Origin: Euprymna scolopes
Taxonomy: Eukaryota
Strand: one strand, 5' to 3'
NCBI GenBank assembly: GCA_053919585.1
Contig: CM132790.1
DNA: 64,000 nt
Below are positions 18,551 to 57,660 of the stretch, one piece after another. Under the pieces are notes generated by a model. That model saw nothing but the letters and a program-made list of their open reading frames with translations. It made no database searches and was not told where the DNA came from. How positions within the stretch are numbered: the stretch's first letter is position 1; each line of letters starts with the position of its first letter. Position numbers and translations under genes: made by a program.

Positions 18551-19186
18551 TGATTTATAATTGAGTGTATGTTTCATCTTAATGATACATTAAAAATCGA
18601 ACTTGTAAGAAATGTTAGATTCTACTGTTAATTATTTATATCTATATTTTTTATTACTTCTTACAACACTTTTGTTTTCTATTTGGAACAATGGGTAGGT
18701 TTGCCCGAGGAATAATTAAGACTCTAAATAAGAAAACCAAAAGGATAGATATAGTCAACTTGTATTATAATTTACCTAATAGCTTGAATGCAGCAATATA
18801 TAAATTTATCAACGTGTCCATGCATTACAGCTCTTCAGTTCAGTCAAATCAATAACTACATGAAGTCGAAATTCAAGCGTCTAGATAAAAGTCGGCGTTT
18901 TTAATCCAATGGTCAACGTTTAGCTTCTGCTAAAATAAACGAAATAACAATGATAAAGATTGTCAAATGTTGAAATCTTTATTTGTTCACGCAAAGAGTT
19001 ATTAGCCAGTAGAAGTTGGCGACTAGTATGTTCAACCCAAGAAAATAGCATATTTATTCATCGTCGTATTACCGGCTTTTAATACTGTTAGACAAACAAC
19101 TACTTGAATCCGGAATTGAAACTACACAGTTTAGACGACAGCCGGTGTTTCTAGCTCCTTAGCTATACTATCTATCTATCTATCTA

Positions 19187-19248
<62 letters not shown>

Positions 19249-20125: not shown

Positions 20126-20173
20126 CTCTTTATGCGATGGACTTTCAAAGCTAAATGCTTCTCATCAGAAGAG
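20126..20173 (-). ncRNA. Hammerhead ribozyme-like motif (type I, stem III decayed)
   Basis: Minus strand: CTCTT-CTGATGA-GAAGC attta GCTTT-GAAA-gtccatcgca-TA-AAGAG. Stem I is a perfect 5 bp and stem II is 5 bp. Confidence 0.65.
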
Positions 20174-27620: not shown

Positions 27621-27810
27621 TTCAACAGTATTTCTCGCGATTAACGGTGGCCGAATTGATTGAATCCTTGCCAATGGAGTCAAAGATGTTTTCTGTGGCC
27701 GGGTTCGGATCTATCGACCGGAATTAATCGTAACACCCTGCACTGATGATTCCCAAAAAGATGAAACACTAGTTTCTGTAAGTATTTAATAATTATTATT
27801 GTAAATAATT
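27621..27810 (+). mobile_element. tRNA-headed SINE-like element with HHR motif, family A copy 1
   Basis: A box tggccgaattg (27648) and B box gggttcggatc (27701). HHR at 27738-27781: CTGCA-CTGATGA..GAAA-CACTAGTT-TC-TGTAA. Confidence 0.7.
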
Positions 27811-27960
27811 ATGTCAGCCCCTTTAAGAAACTCCTTTCTTGTTGTTGAGCACTTTCAATTGAAATAAAATCAGTCAATTTAACTCGTATGCGCAGATCAT
27901 TATATGATGATTAAATCACTCTGACAGACGTTAAAAATATTTAAAATTAAATGTTTAAAT

Positions 27961-28150
27961 TTCAACAGTATTTCACGCGGTTAACAGTGGAGGAATGAAT
28001 TGGATTCTTGCTAACGAAGTCAGAAATGGTTTGTGTTGCCGGGTTCGGAACTATCGACCGGTGTTAATCATGAAAGTCAGCACTGATGATTTCTGAAAGG
28101 ATGAAACACTGGTATCTGTGGGTATTTTATAATTATTCTAGTAAATAATG
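27961..28150 (+). mobile_element. tRNA-headed SINE-like element with HHR motif, family A copy 2
   Basis: Direct repeat of 27621-27810 at offset 340. HHR: GCA-CTGATGA-tTTCT gaa AGGAt-GAAA-CACTGGTA-TC-TGT. Confidence 0.7.
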
Positions 28151-28289
28151 TTCCCTATCTTAGGTCAAGCATATTGGGAAGTCATATACAAATTACCATT
28201 AGCGTATAAAGCGATGCTCTTTGAGTAAACAAATTGAGTTTAGGTATTTGGACAATGTCAAAACATTGTTAATTCACTGCCCGCATACA

Positions 28290-28477
28290 GCACCGTATAG
28301 CGCAACAGTAAGAAGCACAGACTGTCGTTTGGGCGATCGGGATTCGATTCTTGCTTGAGGTAGTTGCTGGTCTAGCTGCACTGATGAGCTGTGAAACAGC
28401 GAAATAGTACTGCTTGTGGATGACTTAGTATACATATATTCGAACCAAATGTATGATTATTATTCAAAGTCCTCTGC

Positions 28478-28480
<3 letters not shown>
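28290..28480 (+). mobile_element. tRNA(Asp-like)-headed SINE-like element with HHR, family B
   Basis: A box tagcgcaacag, anticodon-like ctgtc, B box ggattcgattc. HHR at 28376-28419: CTGCA-CTGATGA-GCTGT gaa ACAGC-GAAA-TAGTACTG-ct-TGTGG. Ends in (TA)n. Confidence 0.8.
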
Positions 28481-28550
<70 letters not shown>

Positions 28551-28968: not shown

Positions 28969-30024
28969 ATGTTCCTAACAAATTTCCCCACTAAGTACAC
29001 AGCCCCCTACACAATCCCAAACCAAAAACAATTTAATAAGAATAGAAAAGTAAGACGTAAAAAAGCTATTTGGTTCAATCCTCCTTTCAGCTCCAATGTA
29101 AAAACTAACATTCCGAAGGAATTCTTCAGAGTAGTGGAAAAATTCTTTAAATACCCTCATAAGTATAGTACCATATTAAAGAAAAACTCCATAAAAATGT
29201 CATACTCCACAATGCCTAATCTAGCACAGATAATAATTTCGACAAATAACAGGAAAATTAAACAAGCACTGGATATATCAATTGACTCAATACCTAGTAA
29301 CAAATGTAACTGCCAAAATAAAAATGAATGCCCTCTTCATAACGATTGCATACACAAAGACGTGGTATACGCCTGCACAGTCACGCAATTACCAAAACAT
29401 GCAAATAACCAATCAAATGAGGAAAACAATGAATATAGTCGAAACATTCAGAATGCAAGCATACATAGGGAAACATATGTTGAGGGCTCAAATAATAACA
29501 ACATAAACAATAACAGCCAGGCTAACGTACCCAATAATATAATTCCCAGTGAAGACCAGAATAGGATTATCCAGCACCCGAGCTATGAATCTCCAGGCCC
29601 CCTCTTAACCCAGCCCCCCAATATAAGACTCAATAGCAATGTGACTGATGAACAAATAAACAATAATAAAACAAGGAAAACATTCACGTATATAGGTGCA
29701 TCATCAAACTTAATAAAAATAAGAATCTCAAACCACCTACATTCCTTCAGAAATGAAAGATCTCAAAACAATGATAATAATAGTAAATCCTTTACTAAAT
29801 TAATCAATAACCTAGAGGACAAGAAAATGCCCTATTCAATTAAATGGAGCATACTGAATAAATCTAGATCATATGCCCCGGGGGACAAATTTTGCAATCT
29901 TTGTATTTACGAAGCAGTTAATATCATCACCTTCAACAAACCCATAATAAATACCAAGAATGAACTAGTGTCCAGATGTAAACACAAGAAAAAATTTAAA
30001 TGCAGCCATCTTAAAATAAAATAA
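28969..30024 (+). CDS. PLE (Naiad-like) ORF C-terminal part: linker, CxCx5Cx5C zinc finger and GIY-YIG endonuclease (truncated, probably a pseudogene)
   Basis: AIWFNPPFSSNVKTNI..FF, IKMSYSTMPNL, CNCQNKNECPLHNDC, VVY...YIG..KIRISNH..SF, IKWSIL, CNLCIYE, NTKNELVSRCKHKKKF. Confidence 0.9.
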   Translation: MFLTNFPTKYTAPYTIPNQKQFNKNRKVRRKKAIWFNPPFSSNVKTNIPKEFFRVVEKFFKYPHKYSTILKKNSIKMSYSTMPNLAQIIISTNNRKIKQALDISIDSIPSNKCNCQNKNECPLHNDCIHKDVVYACTVTQLPKHANNQSNEENNEYSRNIQNASIHRETYVEGSNNNNINNNSQANVPNNIIPSEDQNRIIQHPSYESPGPLLTQPPNIRLNSNVTDEQINNNKTRKTFTYIGASSNLIKIRISNHLHSFRNERSQNNDNNSKSFTKLINNLEDKKMPYSIKWSILNKSRSYAPGDKFCNLCIYEAVNIITFNKPIINTKNELVSRCKHKKKFKCSHLKIK

Positions 30025-31868: not shown

Positions 31869-31916
31869 TCTCCTCTGATGAGATGGTAGACATCGAAACC
31901 CTATAGGTTAAGGAGA
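31869..31916 (+). ncRNA. Type I hammerhead ribozyme in the PLE 3' region (pLTR)
   Basis: TCTCCT-CTGATGA-GATG gtaga CATC-GAAA-CCCTATAGGT-TA-AGGAGA. Stem I is 6 bp, stem II 4 bp, and stem III is near-palindromic with one mismatch. Confidence 0.85.
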
Positions 31917-57567: not shown

Positions 57568-57659
57568 CTGTCGTTTGAGCGATCGTGTTTCGATCCTGGC
57601 TTGTACTTACTTGTTTAGCCGCACTGATGAGCTGCGAAACAGTACTGAATATGGATGAC

Positions 57660-57660
<1 letters not shown>
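57568..57660 (+). mobile_element. Second copy of family B HHR-SINE (5' part lost in the gap)
   Basis: ctgtcgtttgagcgatcgtgtttcgatcc...CCGCA-CTGATGA-gctgc-GAAA-CAGTACTG..tggatgact, then (AT)n. Confidence 0.8.

What the first reader, a model, noticed from the sequence alone, without database searches (positions are those of the whole stretch)
28290..28480. tRNA(Asp-like) Pol III head fused to a hammerhead ribozyme: a SINE/retrozyme hybrid (family B, second copy at 57568)
Seen: A and B boxes, then about 25 nt later an HHR core CTGATGA...GAAA with a perfect 5-bp stem II, a 5-bp stem I (two G-U pairs) and palindromic stem III (AGTACT), ending in (TA)n. A second copy at 57568-57660 has different lesions. 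Together they give the consensus CCGCA-CTGATGA-GCTGT gaa ACAGC-GAAA-CAGTACTG-(UH)-TG(C/T)GG. Known: minimal type I HHRs with palindromic stem III occur in PLEs and animal non-LTR retrozymes and can cleave as dimers; Schistosoma Sm-alpha repeats are Pol III-related HHR elements. Inference: a non-autonomous self-cleaving Pol III element mobilised by the TA-associated PLE machinery next to it. Both copies here lack the canonical UH triplet, so they are probably inactive.
Basis: partly seen in the sequence, partly recalled or inferred. Interest (0 to 1): 0.85.

Follow-up and report, generated by a model that had tools for sequence, protein, structure and literature searches.

The report
Dead copy of hammerhead-ribozyme SINE-like retroelement
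This is a mutated, inactive copy of a short non-coding jumping element, present in thousands of copies in a large mollusc genome, that joins a tRNA-derived piece to a small self-cutting hammerhead RNA motif and inserts into (TA)n repeats; the design is already known from blood flukes and animal "retrozymes", so it is a new example and not a new kind.

Summary
At 28376-28419 there is a hammerhead (HHR) core with a perfect 5-bp stem II, a 5-bp stem I and the palindrome AGTACT. A-box-like and B-box-like motifs lie upstream. A second, differently damaged copy lies at 57568-57659.

The element is larger than reported. It is a 279-nt unit (28147-28424), so the tRNA-like piece is internal to the DNA copy and not at its head.

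Genome-wide there are thousands of copies (1,731-4,752 first-look candidates). Their majority sequence carries a complete type I HHR with a GUA cleavage triplet, and 36 of 75 sampled instances are intact. Both window copies are dead.

Copies are 5'-truncated, or exactly one unit long, or carry a partial upstream unit joined by exactly 3 nt. They sit in (TA)n at both ends (p=1.6e-9). Most multi-unit copies stop at or before a point 15 nt upstream of the A box. That fits a Pol III start but does not prove one.

The modelled 1.5-unit RNA folds into an intramolecular double hammerhead. Poly(A) RNA-seq shows only passive, mostly related-family transcripts and no cleavage ends. No Penelope-like (PLE) partner was identified.

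This scan has already found sister families elsewhere in this genome. Verdict: new member of the Schistosoma Sm-alpha / non-LTR retrozyme kind.

The parts
28147..28424 (+). One full unit (u1-u279) of the family-B element, 92% identical to the genome-wide majority
   Evidence: Alignment to the majority of 30 loci and BLAST of 59 loci
28284..28285 (+). Position matching u137/138, where the longest non-array copies elsewhere begin; candidate RNA 5' end, 15 nt upstream of the A box
   Evidence: 5'-end census of 59 loci; inferred, not shown for this copy
28298..28308 (+). A-box-like motif (u153-163)
   Evidence: 2 mismatches to TRGCNNAGTGG in the majority; spacing to the B box is 43 nt
28317..28333 (+). 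Anticodon-arm-like hairpin with GTC in register for tRNA positions 34-36; only 3 of 5 stem pairs are left in this copy
   Evidence: In the majority a 5-bp stem and 7-nt loop sit at the exact tRNA register; 0 of 20,000 shuffles reproduce boxes plus arm
28341..28351 (+). B-box-like motif (u196-206)
   Evidence: 2 mismatches to GGTTCGANNCC; some other copies carry a perfect GGTTCGATCC
28376..28419 (+). Type I hammerhead motif. Core, stem I and stem II are intact. C15.2>T at 28405, U16.1>C at 28413 and A17>T at 28414 destroy helix III and the cleavage site
   Evidence: Descriptor scan; per-copy scoring; alignment
28420..28424 (+). Last 5 nt of the unit (ATGAC). In other copies (TA)n or the 3-nt joint TAT follows directly
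28425..28479 (+). Unique 55-nt spacer between the element and (TA)n; origin unknown
   Evidence: No match in the window or in 59 loci
28480..28549 (.). (TA)35 microsatellite, the family's usual insertion site
   Evidence: (TA)n enrichment at 5' junctions, p=1.6e-9
57568..57659 (+). Second family-B copy (u177-279), cut off by an N gap. An 8-nt deletion removes the stem II 3' strand, U16.1>A; followed by (TA)n
27621..28146 (+). Two units of a different HHR family ('A') that directly abut the 5' end of the B copy; context only

Best explanation
The stretch is a decayed copy of a 279-nt non-autonomous retroelement. In tandem the unit is 282 nt, including a 3-nt TAT joint. The family has thousands of copies in this 5.9-Gb mollusc genome.

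Each unit has three parts: a 136-nt body, a tRNA-derived module (A box, anticodon-like arm with GTC, B box) and, 24 nt further on, a type I hammerhead. The hammerhead's helix III is only 2 bp, closed by the palindromic loop AGUACU.

Shown:
- The family majority has a complete HHR with a GUA site.
- Copies are 5'-truncated like products of target-primed reverse transcription.
- They lie inside (TA)n microsatellites.
- Many carry a partial upstream unit joined through exactly 3 nt.
- Every sampled copy keeps the 10 nt beyond the cleavage site at its 3' end, so the copied RNA was not cut at its 3' ribozyme.

Inferred:
- RNA polymerase III starts about 15 nt upstream of the A box of an upstream unit and reads through the joint into the next unit. 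That would give a roughly 425-nt '1.5-mer' RNA with a 142-nt terminal direct repeat, each repeat carrying promoter and ribozyme.
- The two ribozymes pair through their palindromes into a double hammerhead.
- A Penelope-like reverse transcriptase/GIY-YIG endonuclease that prefers (TA)n copies the RNA. It would be primed by TA microhomology and often finish at the internal TAT.

The two window copies cannot cleave. One has lost U16.1, A17 and C15.2; the other has lost the stem II 3' strand and U16.1.
For: Copy number and co-occurrence:
- 3,117, 4,752 and 1,731 first-look candidates with three different queries. All 40 scored hits in each search cover the query.

Unit, joint and architecture:
-.
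- All 40 scored hits of a joint-spanning query include the TAT joint.

HHR:
- Majority CCGCA-CUGAUGA-GCUGU-GAA-ACAGC-GAAA-C-AGUACU-G-UA|UGUGG.
- The GUA triplet is kept in 90-99% of instances per position, and 36 of 75 instances are fully intact.
- The descriptor gives 0 hits in 100 shuffled windows.
- Stem I variants are CpG transitions that keep pairing.

Dimer:
- The two-strand minimum-energy fold is a double hammerhead with a 10-bp helix III, while the monomer misfolds.
- The 424-nt modelled RNA folds without constraint into an intramolecular double hammerhead.

tRNA derivation:
- Boxes 43 nt apart, with the anticodon arm in register; 0 of 20,000 shuffles reproduce this.
- Relaxed ARAGORN calls tRNA-Asp(GTC) in 7 copies, against 0 calls in 190 kb of shuffled sequence.

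Target:
- (TA)3 or more at 14 of 39 non-boundary 5' junctions, against a 4.8% background, p=1.6e-9.

5' ends:
- 22 of 25 copies that run past the joint stop at or before u137, and 3 end at u137/138. P=1.5e-4 under the truncation rate seen inside the last unit.

Precedent:
- Schistosoma SINE-like elements have a Pol III promoter at the 3' end of the cleaved unit and need tandems (PMC6765202). They are tRNA-Gln-derived (PMC2770079).
- PLE and metazoan HHRs with a short palindromic helix III act as dimers (PMC4209133).
- (TA)n is a preferred target of some PLE clades (PMC8557442).
Against: - Rfam does not recognise either module at its thresholds: Hammerhead_3 at 20.7 bits against 48.5, and no tRNA hit at E<=10.
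- The energy gain on dimerisation is no larger than in shuffles: -9.2 against -8.0 +/- 3.2.
- The 5'-end 'cap' can also be fitted by a roughly three-fold higher truncation rate beyond the joint. Two of the three ends at u138 abut (TA)n, where ATA microhomology could fix the junction.
- The absence of TTTT in the unit is not significant (P=0.22).
- Only 1 of 59 copies (L037) starts at the ribozyme cleavage site, so cut RNA was rarely the template.
- Poly(A) RNA-seq shows reads on both strands, mostly 90-95% alike and running on into unlike sequence or (TA)n. No read ends pile up at the cleavage sites or at u138.
- No autonomous partner was found.
- Copy divergence is uniform, about 4% outside CpG. 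Nothing suggests selection on individual copies.
Confidence: 0.6

Rival explanations
1. Classical retrozyme route. Multimeric transcripts are cut by the hammerheads, the 282-nt monomer is ligated into a circle, and reverse transcription primed at the UAUAAU site runs around the circle once or a little more. The tRNA-like piece has no promoter role.
For: - 20 of 59 copies are exactly one unit long, 13 of them with (TA)n on both sides.
- Upstream partial units are joined by a constant 3 nt.
- The 3' ends always include the sequence beyond the cleavage site, as expected for a religated or uncut template.
- Unit size and 44% GC fit metazoan non-LTR retrozymes (PMC7229834).
- A higher stop rate in a second round would also explain the rarity of long copies.
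Against: - No circular or unit-length RNA was seen, but only poly(A) libraries could be laid.
- A circle does not predict that copies end around u137/138.
- It does not explain why a tRNA-geometry module is kept next to the ribozyme across several diverged families.
Confidence: 0.25
2. The tRNA-like segment is only a fossil of the element's origin. Transcripts arise by read-through from host genes or from an unrecognised promoter, and the pile of 5' ends in the tRNA-like region reflects reverse-transcriptase stops at structure.
For: - The majority fails Rfam tRNA and default ARAGORN.
- Both boxes have 2 mismatches, including G53.
- RNA-seq reads look like passive read-through on both strands.
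- 12 of 24 upstream 5' ends fall at u159-195, inside the tRNA-like fold and not at a predicted start.
Against: - Box spacing and the anticodon-arm register are far beyond chance.
- Related families seen in reads keep A-box-like D-arm variants while the sequence between differs (tables 5c and 7).
- Schistosoma offers a precedent (PMC6765202).
Confidence: 0.25
3. An ordinary LINE-dependent tRNA-SINE whose (TA)n is its own 3' tail; the hammerhead-like motif is incidental.
For: 5' truncation and a simple-repeat 3' end are also typical of LINE-mobilised SINEs.
Against: - (TA)n also flanks the 5' side of copies truncated at arbitrary positions, so it is the target and not a tail.
- The tRNA-like part is not at the 5' end of the copy.
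- The HHR descriptor is met in full by the majority and never in shuffles.
- Partial tandems with a fixed joint are a PLE/retrozyme trait (PMC8557442, PMC7229834).
- The element has no similarity to the Ceph-SINE RTE-like domain quoted in PMC5786205.
Confidence: 0.04

Closest known systems
Schistosoma Sm-alpha / Sj-alpha SINE-like retroposons (Ferbeyre 1998 and Laha 2000, as summarised in PMC6765202 and PMC2770079)
   Same: Short non-coding, high-copy element that combines a tRNA-derived Pol III-type promoter with a hammerhead. The promoter sits just upstream of the ribozyme, so a solitary cleaved unit loses it and tandems of two or more are needed.
   Different: Different phylum (Mollusca, not Platyhelminthes) and a different tRNA-like source (Asp-like GTC loop, not Gln). 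No sequence relation was tested. Here insertion is into (TA)n, and the ribozyme has a 6-nt palindromic loop III that predicts obligate dimer action. Pol III transcription and cleavage are not shown here.
Metazoan non-LTR retrozymes (Cervera and de la Pena 2020, PMC7229834; vertebrate survey, bioRxiv 10.64898/2026.07.22.740005)
   Same: About 300-nt AT-rich units with a type I HHR, found as monomers and short tandems. They are non-autonomous and proposed to depend on PLEs. Dimeric HHR action is reported in amphibian examples.
   Different: Those papers describe no tRNA-like or Pol III module. Circular RNA, their defining intermediate, could not be tested here.
Hammerheads of Penelope-like elements in their pseudo-LTRs (Cervera and de la Pena 2014, PMC4209133; Craig et al. 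2021, PMC8557442)
   Same: Short helix III with a palindromic loop, G10.1-C11.1 pair, ribozyme inside a terminal direct repeat, partial tandems, 5' truncation, (TA)n target preference of some clades.
   Different: No ORF. The whole element is 279-425 nt. No sequence was shown to be shared with any autonomous PLE.
Cassandra / TRIMp3 (Helenus, Ajax) non-autonomous LTR elements with small-RNA-gene promoters in their LTRs (PMC10886601)
   Same: A Pol III-type small-RNA-derived promoter carried in the terminal repeat of a non-autonomous retroelement.
   Different: Those are LTR-type elements with PBS/PPT and no ribozyme. The resemblance is one of design only.

Membership tests
Hammerhead ribozyme, type I | Conserved core C3 U4 G5 A6 N7 G8 A9 ... 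G12 A13 A14 | tested here: met
   Present in the window copy (28381-28387, 28401-28403) and in the majority; intact in 53 of 75 instances
Hammerhead ribozyme, type I | Helices I and II flanking the core, G10.1-C11.1 | tested here: met
   5 bp each. 74 of 75 instances keep at least 4 pairs in helix I and 75 of 75 in helix II. 0 descriptor hits in 100 shuffled windows
Hammerhead ribozyme, type I | A15.1-U16.1 pair and H17 cleavage site | tested here: met
   Met by the family majority (GUA). Not met by either window copy: U16.1>C with A17>U, and U16.1>A
Hammerhead ribozyme, type I | Rfam gathering score | tested here: not met
   Hammerhead_3 scores 14.9 bits (window) and 20.7 bits (near-majority copy L033) against 48.5. 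Short-helix-III variants are known to escape standard descriptors (PMC4209133)
Hammerhead ribozyme, type I | Self-cleavage | not testable with these tools
   No pile of read ends at the cleavage sites in poly(A) RNA-seq, which is not a fair test
tRNA-derived SINE | A and B boxes with tRNA-like spacing | tested here: met
   u153 and u196, 2 mismatches each, 43 nt apart; 0.44% of shuffles match this; with the anticodon arm in register, 0 of 20,000
tRNA-derived SINE | Recognisable tRNA fold | tested here: not met
   No RF00005 match at E<=10. ARAGORN only at a relaxed threshold, in 7 copies, with a misplaced T arm
tRNA-derived SINE | Promoter module at the 5' end of the element | tested here: not met
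   The module is at u137-228 of a 279-nt unit. It could be the RNA head only in tandem transcripts
Non-LTR retrozyme | Short tandem or monomeric repeats of about 170-400 nt with a type I HHR, low GC | tested here: met
   282-nt period, fixed TAT joint, 44% GC
Non-LTR retrozyme | Abundant unit-length circular RNA | tested here: inconclusive
   Only poly(A)/oligo-dT libraries were laid; no back-joints at the unit joint were reported
PLE-dependent non-autonomous element | Insertion bias for (TA)n, partial tandems (pseudo-LTR), 5' truncation | tested here: met
PLE-dependent non-autonomous element | Sequence shared with an autonomous PLE of the same genome | not tested
The neighbouring ORF has no Pfam RT or GIY-YIG match

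The most novel reading that the evidence does not exclude
The functional element is not the 279-nt unit but a roughly 425-nt '1.5-mer'. Its 142-nt terminal direct repeat would carry both a tRNA-derived Pol III promoter and a dimer-only hammerhead. This would be a Penelope-type counterpart of Cassandra/TRIMp3 elements. The upstream repeat would start transcription, and the two repeats would pair within one RNA into a double hammerhead that can release a circularisable 282-nt monomer. That would give a direct genomic read-out (5' ends at u137/138) that the tRNA-like module really is the promoter. Earlier follow-ups in this genome left that point open.
Probability: 0.3. Interest if true: 0.55.

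Novelty: new member of a known kind. Interest (0 to 1): 0.33.

Why it matters
It extends the Schistosoma Sm-alpha design (tRNA-type promoter next to a hammerhead, dependent on tandem copies) to a mollusc. It also ties that design to traits of Penelope-like elements: (TA)n targeting, pseudo-LTR-like partial tandems and a dimer-only ribozyme.

If the 5'-end cap at u137/138 holds in a full census, it offers a cheap way to test how animal retrozymes are transcribed, which the retrozyme papers read here do not address. The particular copies in this window are dead and have no function of their own.

Tried and rejected
- **Rfam.** Nothing at gathering thresholds on the window. Only sub-threshold Hammerhead_3 matches on the region, the second copy, 20 loci and a near-majority copy. 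The microRNA 'hits' are (TA)n/(TG)n artefacts.
- **ARAGORN.** Nothing at default settings on the window or on the majority.
- **RF00005 search of the genome to fetch a real tRNA-Asp.** The source tRNA, more copies and a PLE partner could therefore not be pursued.
- **RNA-seq.** Element words are held by RNA runs of studies P5 and P8. The laid reads are mostly 90-95% alike and 77-93% of them continue into unlike sequence, so they come from related families or embedded fragments. They lie on both strands and give no ends at the cleavage sites. This shows no autonomous expression and is no test of circles.
- **Dimer energy gain against shuffles.** Not significant.
- **Absence of TTTT as a Pol III read-through signature.** Not significant.
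- **Selection on the HHR within copies.** Divergence is uniform.
- **Compensatory covariation inside the family.** None; only one-sided CpG transitions. Between families A and B, stem II and the loop III palindrome differ while pairing is mostly kept. That rests on two decayed A units only.
- **Identity with Ceph-SINEs or MetaSINEs.** Rejected; those are tRNA-headed with RTE-like bodies (PMC5786205, PMC4824008).
- **Neighbouring ORF as a PLE endonuclease.** Not confirmed by Pfam; there is only a feature-based lead.
- **The 55-nt spacer after the window copy.** No match anywhere.

Full report
**What is there.** The window lies on a chromosome-scale contig of a 5.9-Gb, 925-contig genome. RNA-run labels and earlier notes of this scan call it a mollusc; the species is not given.

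The reported stretch contains, in order:
- an A-box-like motif (28298-28308);
- a hairpin with GTC where a tRNA anticodon would be (28317-28333);
- a B-box-like motif (28341-28351);
- 24 nt later, a hammerhead-like motif (28376-28419) with an intact CUGAUGA/GAA core, a perfect 5-bp stem II with a GAA loop, a 5-bp stem I with two wobble pairs, and the palindrome AGTACT.

A structure descriptor that omits the cleavage triplet finds this site and two others in the window (31870-31915 on +, 20126-20173 on -). It finds none in 100 shuffled windows. The second copy at 57568-57659 is real and differently damaged.

**True extent.** A search of the window's own genome gave 3,117 first-look candidates. 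All 40 scored hits were 86-89% identical and also shared sequence upstream of the reported start.

Alignment of 30 loci, and then of 59, defines a 279-nt unit: u1 starts AATGC and u279 ends GGATGAC. In the window this is 28147-28424, at 92% identity to the majority. The tRNA-like module occupies about u137-228 and the hammerhead u231-274. The 'head' is therefore internal to the DNA copy, preceded by a 136-nt conserved body.

In this copy a unique 55-nt spacer separates the element from (TA)35. In nearly all other copies (TA)n follows GGATGAC directly.

**The ribozyme in the family.** The majority reads CCGCA-CUGAUGA-GCUGU-GAA-ACAGC-GAAA-C-AGUACU-G-UA|UGUGG. That is a complete type I hammerhead: G10.1-C11.1, A15.1-U16.1, C15.2-G16.2 and a GUA site.
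- Over 70 instances, G16.2 is kept in 96%, U16.1 in 90% and A17 in 99%.
- 36 of 75 instances pass a full descriptor.
- The only common stem changes are CpG transitions in stem I that keep pairing. There is no compensatory covariation inside the family.
- Divergence is uniform along the unit, about 4% outside CpG and 14% at CpG. The copies decay neutrally and are not very young.

Rfam does not reach threshold on any copy: 20.7 bits for Hammerhead_3 on a near-majority copy, against 48.5. Variants with a minimal helix III are known to escape standard models (PMC4209133).

**Dimer prediction.**
- As a monomer the motif prefers a non-hammerhead fold (-12.5 against -8.2 kcal/mol).
- Two strands fold into a double hammerhead. 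The 10-nt palindrome ACAGUACUGU forms helix III and each core is completed by the other strand's cleavage site.
- The energy gain is not larger than in shuffles. The support comes from the shape of the fold, not from the energy.

This is the behaviour described for metazoan and PLE hammerheads with short palindromic helix III (PMC4209133, PMC6765202, PMC7229834).

**The tRNA-like module.**
- It fails the Rfam tRNA model (no hit at E<=10 in a 321-nt search) and default ARAGORN.
- At a relaxed threshold ARAGORN calls tRNA-Asp(GTC) in 7 copies, against none in 190 kb of block-shuffled sequence. The T arm is misplaced in those calls.
- Its geometry is tRNA-like. The A box is at u153 and the B box at u196, each with 2 mismatches, 43 nt apart. 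A 5-bp/7-nt hairpin carries U33, GTC and R37 in exact register.
- Boxes with that spacing occur in 0.44% of shuffles. Boxes plus arm occur in 0 of 20,000.
- Related families glimpsed in RNA reads keep A-box-like D-arm variants (tables 5c and 7).

I read it as tRNA-derived. 'Asp-like' rests on the anticodon position alone, and the source tRNA could not be fetched.

**How copies are built.** Of 59 loci:
- 15 are truncated inside the unit at scattered positions.
- 20 are one unit long, 13 of them with (TA)n on both sides.
- 24 continue upstream through a constant 3-nt joint (TAT) into a partial copy of the same unit. One of these (L046) and one of the 20 unit-length entries (L034) are in fact arrays of 2.33 and 2 units.
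- A joint-spanning query gave 1,731 candidates, and all 40 scored hits cover the joint.

5' junctions at arbitrary element positions abut (TA)3 or more in 14 of 39 cases, against 4.8% of background 12-mers (p=1.6e-9). So (TA)n is the insertion target, not a tail.

Every sampled 3' end retains the 10 nt beyond the cleavage site. The reverse-transcribed RNA was therefore uncut, or religated, at its 3' ribozyme. Only one copy (L037) begins at the cleavage site.

**A possible transcription start.** Of the 25 copies that pass the joint, 22 end at or before u137. Three end at u137/138 (L009, L011, L045), which is 15 nt upstream of the A box. That is where a type 2 Pol III promoter would start.
- With the truncation rate seen inside the last unit (survival 0.48 per roughly 140 nt), so few long copies have P=1.5e-4.
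- Three ends in one 3-nt window have P=0.014.

Caveats:
- A three-fold higher stop rate beyond the joint fits about as well.
- Two of the three ends abut (TA)n, where ATA microhomology could set the junction.
- Half of the upstream ends lie at u159-195, inside the module.
- The unit has no TTTT on the sense strand, which Pol III read-through needs, but 22% of shuffles also lack it.

The modelled RNA from u138 through the joint to u279 (424 nt) folds, without constraint, into an intramolecular double hammerhead.

This arrangement matches what is described for Schistosoma SINE-like elements: promoter just upstream of the ribozyme, tandem needed for propagation (PMC6765202, PMC2770079).

**Expression.**
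- Element words are held by RNA-seq contigs in two independent studies, and at small shares in two more.
- Three raw-read poly(A)/cDNA runs and one contig set were laid on a natural 2.3-unit array. Most reads were 90-95% alike, and 77-93% of the raw reads (5% of the contig set) ran on into unlike sequence or (TA)n.
- Reads lay on both strands in the unstranded run.
- Depth peaked on the B-box-to-hammerhead part that several families share.
- Nothing piled up at the cleavage sites or at u138.

This shows passive transcription of relatives and embedded fragments. It says nothing about circles or Pol III products, which poly(A) libraries deplete.

**Partner.** The PLE link is an inference from (TA)n targeting, pseudo-LTR-like partial tandems, 5' truncation and the ribozyme type (PMC8557442, PMC4209133, bioRxiv 10.64898/2026.07.22.740005).
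- The ORF next door (28969-30024) has no Pfam RT or GIY-YIG match.
- It only resembles mollusc and cnidarian GIY-YIG clusters by language-model features.
- No RT was seen in the window.

**Comparison and verdict.** The closest known things are Sm-alpha/Sj-alpha, metazoan non-LTR retrozymes and PLE pseudo-LTR hammerheads.
- The element shares the design of the first.
- It shares the size, tandem habit and proposed helper of the second.
- It shares the ribozyme type and target of the third.
- It is not a Ceph-SINE or MetaSINE (PMC5786205, PMC4824008).
- Cephalopod genome papers in the library only count Rfam Hammerhead_1 hits (PMC6962438).

Earlier follow-ups of this scan described sister families of 284, 321-322, 337 and 492 nt elsewhere in this genome and reached the same class. 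The scan has therefore found this kind before on other DNA.

This report adds, for this family: the correct unit, the intact majority ribozyme, the fixed 3-nt joint, statistics for the (TA)n target, the 5'-end distribution bearing on promoter use, and the intramolecular double-hammerhead fold.

It is a new member of a known kind, and the window's two copies are relics.

**Method note.** A majority-rule string of this short non-coding repeat was used inside scripts as a coordinate system only.

Noticed in passing
G000 contig C11, about 1.68-2.16 Mb (loci L061-L090): A very large head-to-tail array of tRNA genes with a 144-bp period. It is almost all tRNA-Thr (TGT/AGT) with interspersed tRNA-Lys (TTT) and an occasional Ser(ACT)-like variant, scoring 64-80 bits. 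The genome gave 506,012 first-look tRNA candidates.
   Followed up: partly
window 31870-31915 (+): Another hammerhead-like motif (stem I CUCCU/AGGAG, palindrome CCUAUAGG) about 115 nt before a (TA)n run and 1.85 kb after the 351-aa ORF. It is unrelated in sequence to family B beyond the core.
   Followed up: partly
window 20126-20173 (-): A third match to the relaxed hammerhead descriptor (CUGAUGA, 5-bp stems I and II, GAAA) without a recognisable helix III. It may be a decayed ribozyme or a chance match.
   Followed up: no
window 18790-19200 (-): Decayed relatives (61-69% identical) of the tRNA-like plus hammerhead module of family B, with a mutated core.
   Followed up: partly
window 27621-28146 (+): Two units of another family ('A', about 340-nt period) with their own B-box-like motif and a hammerhead-like core with palindrome ACUAGU/ACUGGU. 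The family-B copy starts about 30 nt after the second unit's ribozyme, so the three elements are piled head to tail.
   Followed up: partly
window 28969-30024 (+): A 351-aa Asn-rich ORF with no Pfam match. By language-model features it is closest to mollusc and cnidarian clusters, some annotated GIY-YIG (0.94-0.96). No reverse transcriptase was seen nearby.
   Followed up: partly
window 28425-28479: A unique 55-nt spacer between the end of the element and its (TA)35. PLE insertions are reported to carry 30-40-bp 'tails' (PMC8557442), but nothing here shows that this is one.
   Followed up: partly
L040:1771-1791 and L005:1356-1377: In two copies a roughly 21-nt inverted duplicate of unit positions 6-41 abuts the 5' end of the element. 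These are small snap-back or inverted-copy scars of the sort described at PLE 5' ends.
   Followed up: no
L024:1470-1760: One copy sits in the (TA)n centre of a 28-nt perfect inverted repeat, so the microsatellite target was the loop of a palindromic sequence.
   Followed up: no
L017:2707-2826 (-): A 5S rRNA match above Rfam's gathering score (45.1 bits against 38) about 1 kb from a family-B copy.
   Followed up: no
L046:1458-1500, run X39 (organism C): About 1,200 reads of a related species share one fixed flank on each side of a 43-nt hammerhead fragment with a mutated core. This is a single, well-expressed host transcript that carries a fossil of the module.
   Followed up: no
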